A DNA stretch of 14,570 nt, from the NCBI GenBank assembly GCA_054661495.1, contig BAAFSQ010000247.1:1-14570 (forward strand), in the 5' to 3' direction. The notes beneath the pieces are model-generated. The model had not been told where the DNA came from. It saw only the letters and a program-made list of their open reading frames with translations, and ran no database searches. Below are positions 2,720 through 14,570 of this stretch, in pieces. Each line of letters begins with the position of its first letter. Within the stretch, counting starts at the first letter, position 1. This DNA comes from Zygophlyctis sp. KS116. Lineage: Eukaryota; Fungi; Chytridiomycota. Both the position numbers and the translations under genes were made by a program.

Positions 2720-3929
2720 ATGCTTAGAATCTTTTTGTTATTTATTTACTGTAATGCTGCACATGCATTGTTTTCTGATGCATGCAGTAAAGGTGATTTG
2801 TCCAAAATCTAATTTTTAGAACTGGCATGCGGATCATCTTGCTTATTTTTATGTTCTTTTGGATTTCCTTGTACAACAAAAGAAGATTGTAGCTCTAAAT
2901 CATGTACAGCCAAGTTTTGTGATGTTGGAAATGCTGGAACATTTCAGCTGATACCTGCATTTAAATTCAGGATCATAGCTGATAATACTCAACTCGCGAC
3001 TGGATCTACATCATCAAATGTGTATAGTAGTTTTGTAACGACATCAAAGACTGGATCTACATCATCAAATGTGTATAGTAGTTTTGTAACAACATCAAAG
3101 ACTGGATCTACATCATCAAATGTGTATAGTAGTTTTGTAACAACATCAAAGACTGAATCATCTACAAGCTCTCAAAAACCAATCCCTACGAGCCCGACCA
3201 TCGTTAAAACAACTACAAATTCCCAAAACTCAGTTAGCACTATTACTTCTTCTACTTCTAAAACACAAAATACTGCAAGTACAAGTTTTCAATCATCAAA
3301 GATAACAGTTACGTCTGTAATTACCCTGATTAGAAGCACCTCAAGTATTTCTTCAGTCACGATTACATCAAAAACGTCTACAACTACTACTACGTCAAGC
3401 GTGGAGACACCTAAATCCAGTGGTTCACCGGCGTCTTGGGGCGCTGAATGTCTATCTCAGCACAATATTCATCGTGCATCTTGCGAGACACTTGATGGCC
3501 TCCCAATTCCAGCTCTTTCCTGGGATAGTAATTTGGCAAGGGATGCTCAAATCTGGGCAAACACATTAGCTTCACAGAATAGGTTTTATCATTCCATTCA
3601 GATGAAATGGGGACATGGTGAAAATCTCTATGCAGTAACTCTTAATGGAAATTTAAATTGCAAACCGGCTGTTGATGCATTCTTTAATGAATACAAGTTG
3701 TATAATAATGAACCAATCGGACAAGGTAATTTCGAGGCATATGGCCATTTTACTCAGCTCGCTTGGCCTACTACAACTAAGATTGGCTGTGCGTACGCTG
3801 ATGGGACTAACTGGAGATATACTGTTTGTGAGTATGATCCACCGTAAGTGTTTTTTATTAACAAAAAGTGGGAATTTTGTTGGCAGGAGACTTAATGTCC
3901 GAGTTAAAGGAAAATCATCGTATAGATGA
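2720..3929 (+). CDS. Secreted CAP/SCP/PR-1 (Pry-like) protein: signal peptide, 8-Cys module, Ser/Thr-rich linker, CAP domain (exons 2720-2792, 2820-3843, 3869-3929)
   Basis: Signal MLRIFLLFIYCNAAHA; 27-nt intron 2793-2819. CAP motifs HNIHRA, LSWD, YHS, GENL, NE, GHFTQLAWPTTTKIGCA. Removing the 25-nt intron 3844-3868 restores the canonical VCEYDPPGNFVG. Confidence 0.92.
2783..2929 (+). other. 8-Cys module, copy 1 (on CAP protein)
   Basis: Spliced translation CSKELACGSSCLFLCSFGFPCTTKEDCSSKSCTAKFCDVG. Confidence 0.9.
2998..3155 (+). repeat. 51-bp tandem repeat x3 (+5 bp) encoding TGSTSSNVYSSFVTTSK
   Basis: Units start at 2998, 3049 and 3100, with a partial unit at 3151. There is one synonymous difference (acg in unit 1 vs aca). 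Confidence 0.97.
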
Positions 3930-4070
3930 TTATGTAAAAAAGGCTGTGTAAATTTAATAATTAAATTGTATTTATTTATTAATGAATTCAAAATAATGCT
4001 GAAATTAGATGGTATAAGACCGGCCTCTTGCGACGTAATGCTAGTTTCCTGTCCCATCCGCTTAATTCTA

Positions 4071-4820
4071 ATGATACTTTCTATATTCTACTTGATCTTG
4101 TTCATTAGATCAGGAGTTGTATTGTCTAGTAGATGTGATCAGGGTAAGAAATGACAATAAATCTTAGAAGTGGGCTGTGGATCTCATTGTCCATTCTTCT
4201 GTCCATTTGGCTTTCCTTGTGATAGAGCCGATGATTGTATCTCTAAATCATGTACATCTGGATTTTGTGATGTTGGATCAGCGGCAAAATTTCGGATTCT
4301 ACCGAATAATCAATCAACTGCGACAGTCCAGTCTACAATCACTGCGCCTTTAACGACTCAAACTCCATCTATGATTCCATTCGGAAATTCAAATTACAGT
4401 GGCCGTATAACTTATTATGGTGATTACTACAATACTGGCGGAAGAGGAGATCCTCCACCGATCGGCCCAGAAAACGGAGGATGGTATGGCTCCTGTTATT
4501 TAGATTTTGGAATCCCAAAGAATTGGAATAAGTTTGCAGCTTTAAATCAGGAGCAGTATCAGAAGCTAGGACTGAAGAGCGTTTGCGGAAAGTGTGTAAA
4601 GATATGGAATGGAAACAGATCTACGATTGTTCAAATTGTTGATATGTGTCCATCCTGCAAATGGGGCGCATTAGATATATCACATCAGGGTATGGCAGAG
4701 CTGGTTGGAAGTTATGATCAGGCAACTTTTGTAGGATTTTTGCCCAGTGCCAACTGGTCTCAAGTTGACTGTTCTACTTTGAATGAAGAAGCATTTTTTA
4801 CTGTTGTGCATGGGAAATAA
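4071..4820 (+). CDS. Secreted expansin/loosenin-like protein with an RlpA-type double-psi beta-barrel (DPBB) domain and N-terminal 8-Cys module (exons 4071-4143, 4168-4820)
   Basis: Signal MILSIFYLILFIRSGVVLS; 24-nt intron GTAAGA..TCTTAG 4144-4167. DPBB motifs G-x-ITYY, GSC, FAALN, CGKCVKI, VQIVDMCPSC, ALDIS, W..VDC. No C-terminal CBM63-like domain. Confidence 0.88.
4134..4277 (+). other. 8-Cys module, copy 2 (on DPBB protein)
   Basis: Spliced translation CDQEVGCGSHCPFFCPFGFPCDRADDCISKSCTSGFCDVG. Confidence 0.9.
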
Positions 4821-5026
4821 TTCAAACGTCATTTTTATGTTTTAAATTATAGTAATTGCAAATAAATGGAAATCTCCAACGATCAGCTTTTGCGAGAAGA
4901 ATACGGGTAACGTTCAATTTCATCTTTTCTTTTTTGCTCGATTTCCACAGGCTATCAAAGATAAATCAAAGAAAAAATAAATCGGATTTGATAGGCATTG
5001 TTTTTGATTTTAATTGTATTTAGACT

Positions 5027-8000
5027 CTACATGTTTTTGTAAAGATGATCAAAGTAGCTTTCCATATCGTTAGAATCTTTAGCCTTATAACTTAAGCAAA
5101 GTGATTCGATAGCATGTCTTCTAGTGGCAGCGGGTTTTTTTGAATTTGTTAATGCTCTGAGATGTATCCCGATAGATATGCAAGTCATCCTTATTAGTGA
5201 AGACATCGACCGCATAGTTACTAAGGAATCATGTATCAGTGGGCATGAATTCTGTAGAAACTTTCCTATCGAAATATTTTTTTTTACTTCAATGCGTATC
5301 CGATGCAAACCAGATAAATCCCTCAATGGGATTATGAAAATGCAAATTAGAACATTTTCGTCTTTGAAAATCTGATTCAACAAGCTTTCATAGGAGTTCG
5401 AAGAGCTCTGATACCATATTATAATAATAGGATTGGATTTTGGAATATTATTCGCATAAGGAACATAAAAACTAATTTCCTCCGTTGCTGTCGCCCAATG
5501 AATATTCTGAGAGTTATCGAATTTATGACCCCGGGATGCATCTATATCGTCTTTCATTATCCAGCCGAGTGATCCAACAAAGGCTTTAAAGTCCGGACTT
5601 AATTTTACCGCTGAATATATTTTATTTAGGTTGTCTGTTTCATCATCGCAATACAGAACTGTAGCACTACATGATTCCCGTCTAAAGGTTTAATAAAAAC
5701 TATCAGATACTCTTTCAGTTGATCAATTCTCTTAAATTCCTTTTTAAGGTGCTCTGATGAATTGGGGTTAATTGGAAATGGAATTAAATCTTGAAGTCTT
5801 GATCCATCTAAATATCCAAAATGAGCAAGGAAAAGGTTAAAAATATGACTTCTATGTAATTTAGATGTATTTTAGTATTACGGGTTTTTAAAGTCGTCCA
5901 GCTCCACTAGAGTTGGTTTTTTCGCTTGATCAAATCCTTTCAACTCGCCTCTGTTATCATTAGTTTGTCAATTTTTACTTTTGTATTTTTGATTCCAGAA
6001 ATTCTTGATCATATTTCGAAAGATCTGACACTTTCTGTCTGATTGCTATAAATCTGGCATATTCCTTGGATGATGGATCAAGTAGAGTTTTCACATTAGG
6101 TATACTGGAATCAATATACGGGTCTATATGATCTACAGATGAATTTTCAGGCTTGTAGGGATCCGATCTAAAAATTGTACGAGACAAATATGATTTATCA
6201 ACTTCATCCTTAACTTCGCCATCACTCTTCAAGCTTTGAAGTTTATTCTGATTCAATTTAAAGATCCAACTAAATTTTCCCAGCATATCTCTCAATAGTA
6301 ACAGGATGTAACCGTCACGATTTGATAAGTCAAATTGTTGTACTTTGTGAAGCTGCGTTGGGATTCCTCTTTCCAATGCCCAAAGTGGAAGCTCTATTAA
6401 AGTCATAATAATACGATTTTGATATCCATAATAATGTACAAATTTCTGTTTTTCGTCATTTGTGATTTCAGCTGACCGATCTTTCTTGCAGAGATCAAGT
6501 CTTAGTAAAACAATTTCAGAGATAATTTCTTCTTCATTTAAATAGCATCCGTGAAAAAATCCATATTGACTGGAAAAATGGGACGGCTTATTTAAGACTG
6601 AAGAGAATGCCAATTCAGCCGATACCTTGATTTGGATTTCGGCGGTGAGAACTGCAAAGCTAGATACTTTTGAACTACCCCCGTGCTTTATTTCTTTGGA
6701 AAGCTTTTCTTCGGATTTTTTTGTCTCTTTCGATTGAAGATCAACATGAGACACAGTTCTAGGAATCATAAAAAGTCGTTCTGGATTGATAAATTTCCCC
6801 GCACGCATTTTTACTGCAACTAGAGAATTGTCTTTCTCAGAAATTGCCATACCCCTCGAAAGCGTCGATATAACCAGATTAAAGATTTCTGAAGCTTTTG
6901 AAATCCAATTGCCAGCCAAACACCATTTTCGAAGAGATCCATAAGCTTTTGAGACTAGAAGTGCATTTTCCTATTTTTGAGATATTTTTACATACTTTCA
7001 CGTCAGGTACATTTAATTTCTTTTCAATAAGTAGGCAAATCGCTGATACCAATGAATGAACACATTCCCATTCCTTCAATTATAATTTAGGAAAAATACC
7101 TTGCATTCAATAGATTCACGATGCAGGTAATATTCTATGCACCTTTCAGTTAAATCCAGACAGTCTATGAGAACATTATTCGACAAATTATCGCTTATTA
7201 TCACTTCAGTCTGCAGCTTTAATATTATATTAACAAATATCAAATTATCCGCAAATGTTTCAGCGAGAAAAGCTGAAGCTGCGAGGAATAGTAACTTTAA
7301 ATGTTCGTGTGATTTTTCCTTTGTAATTGACATAATAATTAGGTAAAAACAACATCTCTGCATCTCTGAGTTTTTCATGCCACCTATTTGTCCATATATG
7401 TCCGTTATCTAAACACTTATATTAACTTGAATTACTATCATTGATATATTGTCTTCTCTTTTATATATTGCTGGGATATCGAAGCGTAAATTTGAATTGA
7501 TGTACACTTGAGATATAGCAATAAGCGGAAAAATAAGTTTAATTCCAGAAAGTCGTGCAGATTTTAAATGTTCGTTAGGAGAGCCAATCCAATTTAAGCT
7601 CCTGTGCAATCCTTCAAGAATAGGTCCGATTAGAAACCGATTCCCTTCTAATTCTGAAGAAAATAGCTTCTGACAATGAAGAAAAACTCCTGCGAGATTA
7701 AAATCAGTTCCTTTCAAATTCTAAAATTTTCAATTGATAATAAATACCTCAATCACTGCCGAAAAATATTGATTTCTATATTGAGGATTTATTCTCTCCT
7801 TGAATCCAGCATTCAAAATAATCCGACTGAATATCCCCAAAGCAGCAGATTTTCCCATTTCATAACTAAAATTACTCAAAATATTAAGTACCCCTTCTCA
7901 TTTTTACGTGCTGATTCATTAAGCCACGGCCCGAGCATACTTAAGATGGTATTTCTTGAAATATGGATGTCTCCAGTTTGATTTTCTATTTCCTGAGTCC

Positions 8001-9147
8001 CCATCAAAGCTTCAGCGGTATCTGAAAGGCCCTAAAGATTTGATTTATTTTATTACCTCGAGTATAATATCAAAGTTGGAAGCAGAATAATTTCCAGGAT
8101 TACCAATAAGATCTAGTCAATAAAAGTAGTCAAAAAATACGAAGAAATCGGTACCAAAAGAATTTAACGAAATCTATCTGCAGCTCCACAAAAATTTCTT
8201 TTTCATCTCTAATATTATAAGATTTAAATTGGATACGTTGAAATATTTAAGTTAACCAAACTGCTTTGCATGTTGTATAAATGTTTACTTATAACAGTAT
8301 TCAAAGTTTTTATGGTGCATTTCCAAACATTCGCCACAGATTTATGATTAGCCCATAAAGGAAAACGCTTCTATGAGGATAAGTCACTGAATCTCACAAT
8401 TATCAATTTCCATAAAAATTGATCTCTACATTTGGCTCTTTGCAACGTCTCTACAAGGAGTTTCATCAAAGGTTCGGCCAATCGATCAACCATTTGCGTG
8501 TATTCTGGGATTCCTTCTTCTTTAAGACAATTTCCAAGCACAGTGTCCACAATTCCAAATAAAATTTTCAATAACGATACCCAAGTATCTTCTAAAATGA
8601 AACGTTCATGTTTCCGTATTACCAAAAACAATCCCTTTACAATATCAAAGCATAAATTAATATTTAAAGAGGCAGATTGTTTCTTTTGCGTATCAGAAAT
8701 CCCTGTAGCCGTTGAGTCTGAATTGGTCAAATCTCTTGGCTCAAAAGCCATTGATAAGTGCTGAAATATTTTGATCAAAAGTTTATCATGCATATCAGTC
8801 TCTCTGAACTCTCTTACTGCTTTTGGTAAATCATATATTTCCCCTAGGAGCCATTTGAAGTATATTGACAGACATGAAGTCTTTAACGATATATCATCCA
8901 TTGGCATTCTAAAAGCATGTCCTACTATTTGCATTGTCCATTTTAAATGACCCCATGACTCTAAATCGAGTATTACATCCTGAGATAAAGAGTCTGAAAC
9001 TTGATAGATCAACTGTTTTTGTACAGTATAAGGAAATGCCGATAATACATTGTCATCTTTCTCGTCATTAAATGCATCAACTTTACCTGGATTAGCAGGA
9101 AATAACTGATACTCGATGATCTTGTTACAAAACATACGCAACGTCAT
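5027..9147 (-). CDS. RALGAPB: Ral GTPase-activating protein beta subunit-like (RalGAP-beta), ~1264 aa, 12 introns
   Basis: Introns (minus strand): 8397-8371, 8236-8209, 8140-8113, 8056-8032, 7891-7866, 7747-7721, 7435-7409, 7099-7074, 6995-6971, 5978-5951, 5881-5852, 5710-5682. Removing them gives one 3795-nt frame. Motifs resembling RalGAP-beta: KWTMQIVGHAFRMP, FWYRFLHLIGNP, NTILSMLGPWL, YEMGKSAALG, LFLAHFGYL, plus a C-terminal RapGAP-like region (FVGSLGW, WATATEEISFYVP). Start may be 9135. Confidence 0.85.
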
Positions 9148-9164
9148 TTCCTAATTTCCCGCAT

Positions 9165-11080
9165 ATGTTTGATGATTCCCAAAGAGCCGGAGGTAATATA
9201 CCATCTATAACAATAGCTTGCTTGCTTTCACAGGCCGCTGATTACACAAGTGTCCAGCCGATTCCACGAGAAGGCATTAGACGGCATACAAAGGCACTGT
9301 ATTTTGATGCGCATGAAGGCGGCTTTAACGTTTATGGTATGTAAATCATGATTAATTTTAGACCATTATGATAATTATTCTTTGACCTCTGCTGATGACA
9401 CAAAGGACTATCAGATATTTGGCGTTGTTGGATATATGGATTTTGGTGAGGAAACTTGGTTAATATTAGGATTTGCTCAGTATCTATGTGTAATCACTGA
9501 TCGCAAATTGGCTGCTGAAGTTTGTAATTTTGCCATTTGGAAGATTCTCTCAGTCTCAATGATTCGGATCTCAAGGGCAAAGACAATGTCGCTCGCCGAA
9601 GAGGAGCAGGAGATTCAGTATGTTAATGCAATAGTTGACACATTCTCTACTAAATCTTGCTATTATTCTTTAAATTTGGATTTAACTACAACTATGCAGC
9701 AGGCACAAGCTAAAAATTTAAATCATTTGACTGAAGGGGATACATTTCGGTCTCTTAATCCAAAATTTTGTTGGAATTGGCATTGGATTGAGCCATTAAT
9801 CCAAGATCAATGCACTCATCCATATATTATACCAGTTGTATGTGGATTTATTGATTCAATTTTTATGTCATCAATTCCAATGTTATTCAAGTCTGTACTG
9901 AACAGAAGTAGAGTTGGTACAAGATTCTGGAAAAGAGGAGCAAACTCAAATGGTGATTGTGTTATGGATGTATTGACAGAGTTTACGCTATTTCATCCGA
10001 ATTATGTAGCTTCCTATTGTATTAGAAGGGGATCTATACCTTTATTTTGGAGACACGAGGAAGTGGATCCTTTATATATTCCTTCAATTAACATTTCTGA
10101 TGCAAATAGTAACGGCTCAAAAATTGCATGTTTTTCACATCTTTCAAACTTAGGAAATCAGTTTGGAACTCCAGTGATCGCTTTAGATATTCTTGAAAAA
10201 TCCCAAACTGATCTCTCTTGTATTTTTGCAGAGACAATTGGAGAAATGAACCCAAGCAGATTCCTATATATGAAAAAAAACCCACAGTTTCTAAATTCAA
10301 AAAGAAATTTTAAGAAGTTTATGGATGTGGAATTATCAAATCATATCAAAGAACTTAAATTTTTCCTCGTGAATGTTGACGATAAAAAGTTTGCGGAAGA
10401 ATACCAATTTAGGCAAAATGGAATATTTAGGTATTTTTGATTTTACTAATACTAGAGTCTCGTCTGTAGATTGCGTAGATGAAACCGACGTAGCGCAGTT
10501 TTTGATTTGTAAAAAAGCTCTTATTCATATTTTAAAAACCATTGGGGAGCTGGGCAACTCGGCTGAGTCTTTGGACAGGCTCGATCAGCTCAATTTTGAG
10601 AAGCTATGGATGAAAAATGGTGATGCTCTATCAAGAATATACACGGGGACTATCAGTATTAATAGATCATTAGAGTATGGATATTTTTCATTCCTTTTCA
10701 AAAAGATTTATATTGGAATCTCAAGAGCGTACCTAAACTGTTTTACAGATCAAGTTCGGCAGGACAAATTGAACATATTTATGAATCAATTGACCGATGG
10801 ACATAATCCGTTGATTTCACCAATCGCAAATGATATTCACAACATTCGAATGCAAATTAGACAAGCTATCAATCAGAGAGAATTTTCAAGCAAAGTCAAT
10901 TTATCGACATTTTTCTTCATTCAAACATGGATACTACCACGTACAGTTGATGGTTTCATCCAATTTCTCGCAGCGGTTTTTTGGCTCATCATATATATAT
11001 TGTATCGAATATTTGGCTTTAGGCCAAATGATCTTGTTCGAAAAACAATGTCTTTACAGACGATGCCTCAGGTGAATTAG
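9165..11080 (+). CDS. SAC1-family phosphoinositide phosphatase-like protein, predicted catalytically inactive (exons 9165-9336, 9362-10430, 10456-11080)
   Basis: 25-nt introns at 9337-9361 and 10431-10455. SAC motifs IFGVVG, YYS..LDLT, FCWN, RSRVGTRFWKRG, RGSIPLFW, QNGIFR, LWMKNGDALSRIYTGT, FTDQVRQD, and a C-terminal hydrophobic anchor. The P-loop reads SVDCVDET instead of CxDCLDRT. The first exon is less certain. Confidence 0.85.
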
Positions 11081-11125
11081 TAGATTCAATCCAAAATACA
11101 ATTTTAGTACAAATAACAAACTCTT

Positions 11126-12060
11126 CTACTTTTGATATGAGATTGAGAATTTTCTGAAATGGGTATATTGTGTTGTCGGAGTAGCCCAAGAGGCATCACT
11201 TCCTCCAAAAAAGGTTTCAAATTGCATGCCAATAAAAGGTATTGGAGTATCTCCCTGCCAGGCCATCTTATCAAAGTATATAACTAGTTGCCCATTATAA
11301 TAAACTCTCAAAATCCCATTGGCTTTTCCTAAAGTATTTAACGTTATACTCTGTTGTAAACTATTCCATGTGCCAGGCTTAAACCTGAATGAGCCACGTC
11401 CGACACTATCACCATAAACAGGATCACAAACAGTCAGGCGGGGTATTTGACAATAAGAAGGAACCTGCTTTAGCGGGTTTACATATAGATAAATTTCTCC
11501 AACTCCTGATTGCCGAAACTATAAATAAATAAATCTTTATCATCTTCATCATACCATAAAGCGAGTGGAGAAGCAATCAGTGGCACCACTCCCACCTGAG
11601 CAAGACATTCGACCAGCGAAAATGCCAGGAAGTTTCCCCCCCTTTACAAAGTTGAAATTGGAAGGGAAATAGACTTGATAAGACAATGTAACTGTCTTAG
11701 CGGTTGAAAGATCTAACGGATCTGCATAAAATCCCAATCCTCCGACTGGAATTGCAGATGGTTTATAACTTCCTGCTGGATATCTAATTATCATGATACA
11801 TAGATAATATACTTGATCTTAATTACGGTGTCCGATCCCAAAGGATTCTTTACAAATTCTTGATTTCCATTACCATAAGCTACTTTTATGATATTTCCAA
11901 AGCTATTCATAGATGTGATATTTTCAACACACCACGATTGGGCTGTAGCTCTCTTTACTACCGAACTGCGGTGATTTAGTAGATACTGGGGAACGCTCGG
12001 GGAGGCAAGAGACAGGACGATTGTATCCAAAAACAAAAATGCCTTGAGCAAAGTAATCAT
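11126..12060 (-). CDS. Secreted polysaccharide lyase family 14 (alginate/glucuronan lyase-like), paralog B, no Cys module (exons 12060-11813, 11783-11555, 11518-11126)
   Basis: Signal peptide and propeptide ending VVKR. Introns 11812-11784 (29 nt) and 11554-11519 (36 nt). PL14 motifs YPAGS, GGLGFY, F.FVKGGKLPG, CSGG, CFSTRFMFR, GEIYLY, YGDSVGRGSF, FETFFGGSDASWATP. Confidence 0.9.
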
Positions 12061-12145
12061 TTATTTATCCAAATGAGTAACCTATAACAATTCTGACACT
12101 CCAAAATGCGGAGTTTGATTAAATGAATGCAAGAATGAATCACTT

Positions 12146-13228
12146 TTATTTATAAGTAATTGAGAAATCTTTGTAGTATGAATATTGAGTAACTGGTGAT
12201 GCCCAGGAAGCATCTGATCCACCAAAAAATGTTTCGAATTGAATACCAATAAATGGTATTTTAGTGGCACCTTGCCATGCAACTTGATTGAATGATATGA
12301 CTACTTTTCCATTGCAAGAGACTTCTAACTTCCCATTAGTCTGTCCGATAGTATTTAATGTAATAGTTTGAGAAACTGAAGTCCAAGCACCAGTTGCAAA
12401 AGTAAATGCACCTCTTCCAATACTGGTTCCATAAACTGCATTACATTCACTGAATGGAGGAATTTGACAGATTGCAGGTACCTGAGCACTATCATCCAGA
12501 TACGCATATAGTTCACCAAGTCCGCCTTTACGAAACTAGGTATTTAGATTATTGTAATCAAACCATGAATCTAGTAGAAAAGCAATCTTTCCCAGCGGAT
12601 CCACCAGAGCAACTAGGACGTCCACCAAATAATCCTGGAAGCTTCCCTCCCTTCACAAAGTTAAAGTTTGGAGGAAAGTAGACCTTGTAAGACAGAGTAA
12701 CAGTTGTGGCTTTAGATAAATTAACAGGATCAGCATAAAATCCAGTTCCTCCAACTACTGCTCCAGAAGGATTAAAACTTCCTGCAGGGTACCTTGAATT
12801 AGTGATACATTTAATTACTTTATCTTGATTGTAGAGCCACTGGAACCTGTCGGATCTGGCGAAAACGCTTGATTTTGGCTCCCGTATGATACCTTTATGA
12901 TGTGACCAAAATCAGACAAAGAAGAAATACTGTTAGCCGACCATTGACTATTAGAAACTGGCCGATCAATTGGAACCGTTGGCTTGACTGTAAACCCTGC
13001 CGGCTTCCCAACATCACAAAAGTTTGCAGTACAAGATCCAGATATACAATCATTCTCAACAGTACAAGGAAATCCAAAAGGGCATTTATACTGGCATCCA
13101 AGTGATGGCGCACCACAACCCAGTTCAGACAAACAATCCGCATTAATTCCAGCATTATATAATGCAAGAACTGAAATTAATAATATTGTAAAAGAATGCT
13201 GTGCCTCACTTATAATAGTATAAATCAT
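12146..13228 (-). CDS. Secreted polysaccharide lyase family 14, paralog A, with N-terminal 8-Cys module (exons 13228-12819, 12792-12564, 12535-12146)
   Basis: Introns 12818-12793 (26 nt) and 12563-12536 (28 nt) lie at the same codon positions as in paralog B. Spliced: KYPAGSFNPS..GGTGFYADP..FNFVKGGKLPGLFGG..CFSTRFMFRKGGLGELYAY..YGTSIGRGAF..FETFFGGSDASWASP..DFSITYK*. Exons 2-3 are absent from the ORF track. Confidence 0.9.
13007..13135 (-). other. 8-Cys module, copy 3 (on PL14 paralog A)
   Basis: CLSELGCGAPSLGCQYKCPFGFPCTVENDCISGSCTANFCDVG; no intron inside. Confidence 0.9.
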
Positions 13229-13267: not shown

Positions 13268-14009
13268 CTATTTTTTAGCCTTGGATCCTTTAAAACTGGC
13301 CTTGATCTCTTTTTTATCCATGGATCTATCTTTCCATTCTGATTTTTGAACTTTACAAGGCCTTTGTCCTATATATTTTCCTATAATTTAAAAATCTTGG
13401 CATACCATCCATTTCTTTTAGTGCATTAAGATAGTCTGTCGCATCTTTAAATGATACAAAACCATATCCTTTAGTTTTACCTGTTTTCTTATCTCTGATG
13501 ACTCTTGCTTTTTGTATTGAAGAATATTTATTGAATGCCTTGTACAAGAGTTCATCGGTTGCCTCATTTCCAATATCACCAACAAAAATCCTATAATCAT
13601 TTTGATCCCAGTCCATCATTGATGCATCCTTCCAAGTCTCTCCACCACCCTTTCTATAAATACTTTTAACTCCAGAACTAGTGGCAGCAGGAGCTTTTAT
13701 CTTGTAAACCTTTGAATGTTTTTTAACTGTAATTCCCATTTTTTCAATGGCTTGTAGAGTTACATTGGGCTTATGATATCCAAGAGGATAAGGAGCAGCA
13801 CCAGCCATTTTATGAACAGCAGCGACTTGTTTTCCTGCAGAAAACTCATAGACTGGACCAATTTCATTTACAGATGATAATGCAGCAGGATTTAGACAAG
13901 GTTCAGCAACTATAGAAAAAGTCTCTTCTTTTGCAGGAATATTAAAAGTATTAGAACTATCCAAATACTGATTAAAATAACTGTCGTCAAACTCTTCGTC
14001 CTGATCCAT
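13268..14009 (-). CDS. RBM42: RNA-binding protein 42 (RRM; U4/U6.U5 tri-snRNP-associated) (exons 14009-13406, 13380-13268)
   Basis: RKGGGETWKDASMMDWDQNDYRIFVGDIGNE...RDKKTGKTKGYGFVSF...ALKEMDG. Removing the 25-nt intron 13405-13381 restores KYIGQRPCKVQKSEWKDR, the typical RBM42 C-terminus. First in-frame ATG is 14009. Confidence 0.9.
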
Positions 14010-14570
14010 TAGGGTTTTACAGTTACTCAAATTGAACTACATCTCAATAATACATTGAATAAACTTATCTGTTCAATGATCAACTTGCATTGAGACCCTG
14101 ATGCACTACTGTGGACTCCAATTCCAATTCATCCAAAGCTTGGCTTGCTGCCTATAATAGAGATTTTATTTAAAGTCGATAAAGCCTTAAAATCGCATGC
14201 CTGAATTCAATTAGTATTGAAATGATCTCTTATCTTTCCGGAAATACTAAATTTTACAATGTTCGGACACGATTAGAATAAATCTAATTTGATTCTTCTC
14301 ATTACATTATGATGGATTTTACAAATAGTTCAAAATTCAAAAAAATTTAATTTCAGATTTTTATGAAAATTCCTAGTAAATTTAACAAGATTGTTATTGT
14401 TCGACTCATAATCCTTCAAAATCAGGACCAGGGCCGGGTCAAAACACGTTATTTGTGTTGTTTGATAGTATATGTTAGAACCGCTAACGTCCTTTTCTGT
14501 TACACATTCAATGCTTGGTTAAATACTTTTCTTATGCTTTTGGGCTTGGTCGATAATTTGATGCTTGCTT

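What the first reader, a model, noticed from the sequence alone, without database searches (positions are those of the whole stretch)
2720..13228. One 8-cysteine N-terminal module shared by three unrelated secreted proteins (CAP, DPBB expansin-like, PL14 lyase): candidate new targeting/docking system
Seen: directly after the signal peptide, three genes within 10.5 kb encode the same ~40-aa module (2783-2929 +, 4134-4277 +, 13135-13007 -). Consensus: C-x2-E-[LV]-[AG]-CG-x(2/5)-C-x3-C-x-FGFPC-x4-DC-x-S-x-SCT-x2-FCDVG-x4-F-x3-P. All 8 Cys, FGFPC and FCDVG are invariant, and DNA similarity persists (ttttgtgatgttgg in all three). Each module is followed by a Ser/Thr/Pro linker and a different fold. 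Established: signal + small disulfide module + S/T linker + enzyme is the architecture of CBM1/CBM18-bearing enzymes and of fungal-dockerin (CBM10-like) cellulosome subunits, but I do not recognise this motif as any of these. Inference: an uncharacterised carbohydrate-binding module (three conserved Phe) or dockerin-like tag that co-localises a wall loosener, a uronic-acid polysaccharide lyase and a CAP effector on one substrate, host wall or scaffold. The Cys spacing also loosely recalls the CGG..C..C..G..C...DC.S..C repeat of some bacterial extracellular proteins, which I have not verified.
Basis: partly seen in the sequence, partly recalled or inferred. Interest (0 to 1): 0.9.

Follow-up and report, generated by a model that had tools for sequence, protein, structure and literature searches.

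The report
Chytrid lyase's shuffled cysteine-rich module
A small, unnamed disulfide-rich domain that chytrid fungi have long carried on one polysaccharide-cutting enzyme has been copied, in a lake-dwelling lineage, onto a neighbouring wall-loosening protein and then a CAP protein; it is probably a new sugar-binding anchor, not a docking system.

Summary
The module is not private to this locus. It is the N-terminal domain of a PL14 lyase subfamily in three chytrid orders (Rhizophlyctis, Spizellomyces, Polyrhizophydium, Batrachochytrium and others), with a shared phase-1 intron. It also sits on a DPBB expansin-like gene in three related taxa, twice directly beside PL14. The CAP copy is most like the DPBB copies and lies right upstream of one. 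So the order is probably PL14, then DPBB, then CAP, by local gene shuffling. No Pfam, NCBIfam, PHROG or PDB family covers it. It is homologous to an unnamed bacterial (mostly myxobacterial) DCGG cysteine repeat and contains a knottin-like hairpin; the fungal form adds four to six aromatic residues. Best reading: a new CBM-like wall anchor (binding untested). A dockerin/scaffold system is not supported: one copy per protein, 3 carriers per genome, 1 of 8 CAPs, 1 of 4 PL14s. The scan had not reported the module on other DNA.

The parts
2720..3929 (+). Gene 1: signal peptide + 8-Cys module + long Ser/Thr linker + CAP (SCP/PR-1) domain; introns 2793-2819 and 3844-3868
2783..2929 (+). Module copy 1 (on CAP), split by phase-1 intron 2793-2819; closest to DPBB-borne copies (73% aa to the L051 DPBB module, 51-57% to PL14-borne ones)
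2998..3159 (+). 51-nt tandem repeat x3.2 (98% match) inside the Ser/Thr linker of gene 1
3452..3835 (+). CAP domain of gene 1; 63% identical to a module-less paralogue on contig C635
4071..4820 (+). Gene 2: signal peptide + module + short linker + single DPBB (loosenin/expansin-D1-like) domain; intron 4144-4167
4134..4277 (+). Module copy 2 (on DPBB), split by the same phase-1 intron
12146..13228 (-). Gene 3: signal peptide + module + short linker + PL14 lyase; introns 12818-12793 and 12563-12536; the Lys, Ser, Arg, Tyr, Tyr positions of the solved alginate lyase 5gmt are kept
13007..13135 (-). Module copy 3 (on PL14), ancestral partner; intron lost in this copy
11126..12060 (-). Gene 4: tandem PL14 paralogue, sister of gene 3 (SH-aLRT 98), without the module
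13353..14030 (-). RBM42-like RRM gene: synteny marker upstream of the PL14 array in Rhizophydiales
9382..11080 (+). Sac1-like gene: synteny marker downstream of the PL14 array
5027..9147 (-). RalGAP-beta-like multi-exon gene that separates the PL14 pair from the DPBB and CAP genes (extent approximate)

Best explanation
The 43-49 aa module is a disulfide-stabilised, non-catalytic accessory domain that works like a carbohydrate-binding module: it tethers a secreted wall-acting domain, through a Ser/Thr/Pro linker, to an insoluble wall polysaccharide. History (supported by sequence): it arose from a widespread extracellular cysteine repeat (DCGG type), shortened the acidic N-terminal loop, gained aromatic residues (FGFP, Y/F before the last Cys), and was fixed on PL14 before Rhizophlyctidales, Spizellomycetales and Rhizophydiales split. 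In one Rhizophydiales lineage the 5' end of the gene (signal + module + intron) was copied at DNA level onto an adjacent DPBB gene, and later from that gene onto a CAP paralogue just upstream. Function (inferred, untested): the aromatic patch stacks on a neutral glycan (chitin, cellulose or beta-glucan) in which the lyase's uronic-acid substrate is embedded; the module's net negative charge argues against direct binding of the polyanion. Lyase, loosener and CAP would then reach the same wall layer because each carries the same anchor, without binding each other. Whether that wall is the chytrid's own or a host's or prey's is open.
For: Module on PL14 in 12 named chytrid genera plus metagenome proteins; no score over 8 bits in the Mucoromycota, Basidiomycota or mollusc PL14s among the 120 best hits. 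Same phase-1 intron between Cys1 and Cys2 in R. rosea, Polyrhizophydium, E. helioformis, B. salamandrivorans, L011, L013, L031, the L030 DPBB gene and genes 1 and 2. Gene order RBM42-PL14(n)-Sac1-like-RalGAPB shared with Polyrhizophydium, E. helioformis and (without RBM42 in view) B. salamandrivorans. Module+DPBB in L012, L030, L051; directly next to PL14 in L012 and L030. CAP copy closer to DPBB copies. Always one copy, N-terminal, before a linker; every partner found is a secreted wall-type domain. 3-6 aromatic residues in 22 of 25 fungal modules against 0-2 in the bacterial repeats; median net charge -3. Compact model, pLDDT 85. Precedent for a small Cys-rich CBM at the N-terminus of an expansin-related protein: swollenin carries CBM1 (PMC12779228).
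Against: No binding data. No sequence or fold match to any known CBM. I could not inspect the model's coordinates, so a flat aromatic face is assumed. The module is dispensable: gene 4, the two other PL14s of the genome and many chytrid PL14s lack it, and Batrachochytrium and L030 PL14 copies have lost the aromatics. CAP domains are lipid/sterol binders by established knowledge, not wall-cutting enzymes. The module tree is unresolved, so the PL14-to-DPBB-to-CAP order rests on distribution, spacer length, identity and adjacency. The DPBB and CAP copies have a 2-residue spacer while the neighbouring PL14 copies have 5, so the DPBB copy predates that insertion or came from another PL14 paralogue.
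Confidence: 0.55

Rival explanations
1. Structural passenger: the module is a folding, stability or spacer domain of the PL14 N-terminus. DPBB and CAP got it only because they borrowed a nearby promoter + signal-peptide exon; no shared targeting.
For: All copies lie in one 10.5-kb block and local copying explains them. Its bacterial relative occurs as tandem repeats in many unrelated surface proteins, as spacers do. Easily lost (gene 4). Gene 1 versus gene 2: dN 0.31, dS 0.61 on 39 codons, a weak contrast.
Against: The FGFP and Y/F-C-D surface motif is kept on all three partner types and across orders, beyond the cysteines; module+DPBB is kept in four taxa whose synonymous sites are near saturation; in L030 the DPBB copy kept the aromatics while the PL14 copy lost them.
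Confidence: 0.22
2. Protein-binding tag (dockerin-like): the module docks lyase, loosener and CAP onto a scaffold or cell-surface receptor, making a small wall-breaching complex.
For: Small disulfide module on unrelated secreted proteins; knottin-like hairpins often bind proteins; fungal dockerins do occur on expansin-like proteins (PMC12954947).
Against: Unrelated to CBM10/dockerin. Fungal cellulosome genomes hold hundreds of dockerin domains (312 across three fungi, PMC6690862); here 3 single copies per genome, and in named chytrids it was found on PL14 only. No scaffold candidate seen; none could be searched for.
Confidence: 0.13
3. Inhibitor or toxin-like knottin: the module acts on a host protease, glycosidase or ion channel and the enzyme is the carrier.
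For: Best PDB matches are venom knottins and a trypsin inhibitor (1hvw E 0.009 by sequence; Z up to 3.5).
Against: Matches are weak and cover only the C-terminal four-Cys hairpin; the adjacent Cys-Cys pair of inhibitor cystine knots is absent; no processing site after the module; conserved in soil saprobes with no host.
Confidence: 0.07

Closest known systems
Unnamed bacterial DCGG cysteine repeat (C.DG..NG.ETD.DCGG.C..C..G..C....DC.S..C....C; mostly Myxococcota surface proteins)
   Same: All 8 Cys in the same order, CG after an acidic residue, G before Cys5, DC.S; hhalign 97.7% over 36 columns; a profile of the repeat finds exactly the three modules in this genome (E 5e-5, 1e-4, 4e-3); the ten best Atlas structure matches are Myxococcota proteins, TM 0.65-0.71 over nearly the whole module.
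   Different: Fungal form is single, N-terminal, has 3-5 residues between Cys1 and Cys2 instead of about 13 with an acidic loop, and is rich in aromatic residues. The repeat itself has no Pfam/NCBIfam model (only a weak TIGR04201 match, E 0.005, 2 of 12 units) and no known function. Direction of any transfer was not tested.
CBM1 and CBM18 (small Cys-rich fungal CBMs)
   Same: Size, disulfides, position between signal peptide and Ser/Thr linker, shuffling among secreted wall-active proteins (swollenin = CBM1 + expansin-like, PMC12779228).
   Different: No Pfam match at E up to 1 for any of 25 members; no CBM among fold hits; different Cys number and spacing.
Fungal dockerin / CBM10 (PF02013)
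   Same: Small Cys-rich tag on secreted proteins; a superficial GFPC word.
   Different: Profile comparison 15.7%, 7 columns; lacks the CC pair and the YG..NG.SC tail; single not tandem; three carriers only.
Inhibitor cystine knot / disulfide-directed hairpin (omega-atracotoxin, EB, Dickkopf-N-like)
   Same: The C-terminal half C..G..C....DC.S..C....C superposes on knottins (1hvw rmsd 0.7 A over 23 columns).
   Different: No adjacent CysIII-CysIV pair; an extra N-terminal part with more Cys; all matches are below significance.
PL14 lyases (Aplysia-type alginate lyase 5gmt, chlorovirus vAL-1 3a0n)
   Same: Catalytic domain of genes 3 and 4; active-site positions kept.
   Different: The solved PL14s have no such module; the substrate of chytrid PL14s (glucuronan or alginate) is not known.

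Membership tests
Fungal dockerin / CBM10 | Sequence match to PF02013 or to this genome's own CBM10-like repeats | tested here: not met
Fungal dockerin / CBM10 | Often tandem copies, on very many enzymes of a genome | tested here: not met
   single copy, 3 carriers found; counts are lower bounds in a draft genome
Fungal dockerin / CBM10 | Binds a scaffoldin | not testable with these tools
   needs pull-down
CBM1 | PF00734 match; four Cys with QCGG and the YY.QC binding face | tested here: not met
   alignment
CBM18 (hevein) | PF00187 match; CCS..G.CG motif | tested here: not met
   alignment
Carbohydrate-binding module (functional class) | Discrete folded non-catalytic domain contiguous with a CAZyme | tested here: met
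Carbohydrate-binding module (functional class) | Demonstrated glycan binding | not testable with these tools
   needs glycan array or pull-down
Inhibitor cystine knot | C-C-CC-C-C pattern with knotted third disulfide | tested here: not met
   no CC pair in 25 members; only the hairpin part aligns; disulfide pairing itself not inspected
Bacterial DCGG cysteine repeat | Eight-Cys spacing and profile similarity beyond Cys spacing | tested here: met
Bacterial DCGG cysteine repeat | Acidic DG..NG.ETD loop and tandem arrangement | tested here: not met
TIGR04201 Myxococcales Cys-rich repeat (TraA type) | NCBIfam match | tested here: not met
   (no match for the three modules); PMC3325183 describes a shorter repeat with three invariant Cys
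PL14 (gene 3, gene 4) | PF21294 above cut-off; Lys, Ser, Arg, Tyr, Tyr of the active site | tested here: met
   which residues are catalytic is from my own knowledge of AkAly30/vAL-1, the paper was not held

The most novel reading that the evidence does not exclude
The module defines a new binding-module family that a lake chytrid lineage has turned into a shared address label: lyase, expansin-like loosener and CAP protein are co-expressed and delivered together to one wall site (host penetration point or the sporangium's own exit papilla), through a common glycan or protein ligand.
Probability: 0.2. Interest if true: 0.72.

Novelty: new variant of a known kind. Interest (0 to 1): 0.45.

Why it matters
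If it binds glycan it would found a new CBM family, the first tied to fungal PL14 lyases, and give a probe for the unknown substrate of chytrid PL14s (own-wall glucuronan or algal wall). It shows domain shuffling caught in steps at one locus, and links a chytrid domain to an abundant, still unnamed myxobacterial repeat. The aromatic motif is lost in the Batrachochytrium orthologues, a hint that the ligand matters less in amphibian skin. It does not, on present evidence, reveal a cellulosome-like system outside gut fungi.

Tried and rejected
Word-based protein search with the DPBB module alone found only the gene itself. Pfam, NCBIfam, PHROG: no family. Atlas feature searches: only low-score toxin-like clusters or nothing. 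Module tree unresolved. rRNA search of the genome failed, so the organism is placed by gene order and PL14 relatives only. CBM1 and CBM18 searches of the genome were blank with blank controls, so uninformative. A fourth and fifth weak genome hit (C430, C18) are generic four-Cys hairpin repeats without the motif. Paper searches for the repeat motif, for chytrid knottin CBMs and for this domain on PL14 found no description. Assembly chimera rejected: independent lake contigs join module 1 to its linker and the CAP end to the DPBB start. RNA evidence is one 151-nt piece in gene 1 and proves nothing.
Full report
Observation. The window is a whole 14.6-kb contig of a 12.7-Mb eukaryotic draft genome with 24-36 nt introns. 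Gene 1 (2720-3929 +) encodes signal, module, a 168-aa Ser/Thr linker with a 51-nt triple repeat, and a CAP domain. Gene 2 (4071-4820 +) encodes signal, module, short linker and one DPBB domain that matches solved expansin-like proteins (E 5e-4) and keeps the IVD.CP.C...LD.S core. Gene 3 (13228-12146 -) encodes signal, module, short linker and a PL14 domain. In genes 1 and 2 a phase-1 intron splits the module between Cys1 and Cys2. Spliced models were built only inside scripts from the window file; all searches were made exon by exon by reference, and the joined search step was left out. The PL14 tree used exons 2 and 3 joined inside the script.

How many copies. Three profiles of rising depth find only these three copies in the genome (counts are lower bounds). 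The genome has at least 8 CAP domains, 4 PL14 genes and 2 DPBB-type genes; one of each has the module. Gene 4, the tandem sister of gene 3 (SH-aLRT 98), has an intact catalytic domain and no module. A close relative (L051, 64-74% DNA identity, same gene order) has a single module-bearing PL14 there, so gene 4 is probably a later duplicate that lost it.

Relatives. A full HMMER scan of 1.84 billion representatives gave five true members: four PL14 proteins and one DPBB, including Rhizophlyctis rosea KAJ3051238.1 and a Homolaphlyctis model. A PL14-wide search then showed the module at the N-terminus of PL14s from Rhizophlyctis, Borealophlyctis, Spizellomyces, Powellomyces, Geranomyces, Thoreauomyces, Fimicolochytrium, Phlyctochytrium arcticum, Polyrhizophydium, Entophlyctis helioformis and, without the aromatics, Batrachochytrium salamandrivorans; B. 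dendrobatidis keeps mainly the four-Cys hairpin. PL14s of Mucoromycota, Basidiomycota and a mollusc in the same list lack it. The phase-1 intron is at the same place in R. rosea, Polyrhizophydium, E. helioformis, B. salamandrivorans and four metagenome loci; gene 3 and the L012 DPBB gene have lost it. The order RBM42, PL14 array, Sac1-like, RalGAPB is shared with Polyrhizophydium and E. helioformis, and PL14-Sac1-like-RalGAPB with B. salamandrivorans, but not with R. rosea. This places the organism in Rhizophydiales; runs that hold the DNA are lake and estuary metagenomes.

Shuffling. Module+DPBB occurs in three other taxa: L012 and L030, where it directly abuts a PL14 gene on the same strand, and L051, where it lies as in the window. 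Module+CAP was seen only here; no relative's contig reaches that position, so its absence elsewhere is not shown. The CAP-borne copy is 73% identical to the L051 DPBB copy and 72% identical in DNA to gene 2, against 51-57% amino-acid identity to PL14-borne copies; it shares the short spacer and the intron with gene 2 and lies directly upstream of it. Its CAP domain is 63% identical to a module-less paralogue. The simplest history is PL14 to DPBB to CAP by DNA-level copying of a 5' gene end. The 42-column module tree does not resolve this, so the order is an inference. Independent lake contigs confirm the local assembly.

What the module is. No Pfam, NCBIfam or PHROG family covers it. AlphaFold gives a compact model (pLDDT 85) whose C-terminal half superposes weakly on knottins (Z up to 3.5, no significant Foldseek hit); the Cys-Cys pair of a true cystine knot is missing, so a disulfide-directed hairpin with an N-terminal add-on is the better description (inferred). 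The ten best Atlas structure matches are Myxococcota surface proteins, TM 0.65-0.71, and the weaker HMMER hits include tandem DCGG repeats. Profile comparison gives 97.7% and score 53, above shuffled controls (17.7; 36.6 with Cys fixed) and above a generic hairpin repeat (32.8); the repeat's profile picks out exactly the three modules in this genome. The fungal form lacks the acidic loop and has 3-6 aromatic residues in 22 of 25 members against 0-2; net charge is about -3. I found no paper describing either form; TIGR04201 of TraA is a different, shorter repeat (PMC3325183).

How it most likely works. Shown: architecture, conservation under constraint, partner domains, history. Inferred: a CBM-like anchor. 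PL14 holds alginate and beta-1,4-glucuronan lyases (PMC11890756), and fungal PL14s have been proposed to remodel wall glucuronan (PMC11325530). An acidic, aromatic module fits binding to a neutral wall glycan next to such a polymer better than to the polyanion. Since module+PL14 is kept in soil saprobes and in an amphibian pathogen (lifestyles from my own knowledge), the target need not be a host wall; the chytrid's own wall is as likely. The dockerin reading fails its tests: no similarity to CBM10, although this genome has separate CBM10-like repeats, and three single-copy carriers against hundreds of dockerins in gut fungi (PMC6690862).

Verdict. Interest 0.45; the shared-address reading has probability about 0.2 and would deserve about 0.7.

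Noticed in passing
window 10454-10500 (+), Sac1-like gene: The CX5R phosphatase motif is replaced (SSVDCVDE here, NSLDCVDE in Polyrhizophydium, B. salamandrivorans and E. helioformis; first Cys present but Arg absent in L031 and L051): a pseudophosphatase conserved across Rhizophydiales.
   Followed up: partly
L049 1324-2765 (-) (G000:C2) and L048 1495-1593 (+) (G000:C68): At least six tandem CBM10/dockerin-like units on contig C2, apparently one or two per exon, and one unit on C68, in an aerobic chytrid.
   Followed up: partly
L030 5938-8046: In this relative the DPBB gene keeps the aromatic module while the adjacent PL14 has lost the aromatics: possible hand-over of the binding role.
   Followed up: partly
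P0096, P0101, P0113 (Batrachochytrium PL14s): The module has lost its aromatic motif in B. salamandrivorans and is mostly reduced to a four-Cys hairpin in B. dendrobatidis.
   Followed up: partly
window 11126-12060 (-): Module-less PL14 paralogue has a Lys-Arg-ending propeptide-like stretch in place of the module.
   Followed up: no
P0009 (Homolaphlyctis polyrhiza): The 621-aa model with two PL14 domains and an internal module is probably two tandem genes fused by the gene caller.
   Followed up: no
L021 1243-2328 (G000:C26): A divergent PL14 with a C-terminal hydrophobic tail (possible membrane or GPI anchor) and no module.
   Followed up: no
bacterial proteins P0012, P0013, P0015, L052 3092-4288: The abundant DCGG cysteine repeat has no Pfam or NCBIfam model and is auto-named 'tryptophan synthase alpha chain' in one Atlas cluster; it also occurs in Ralstonia.
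   Followed up: partly
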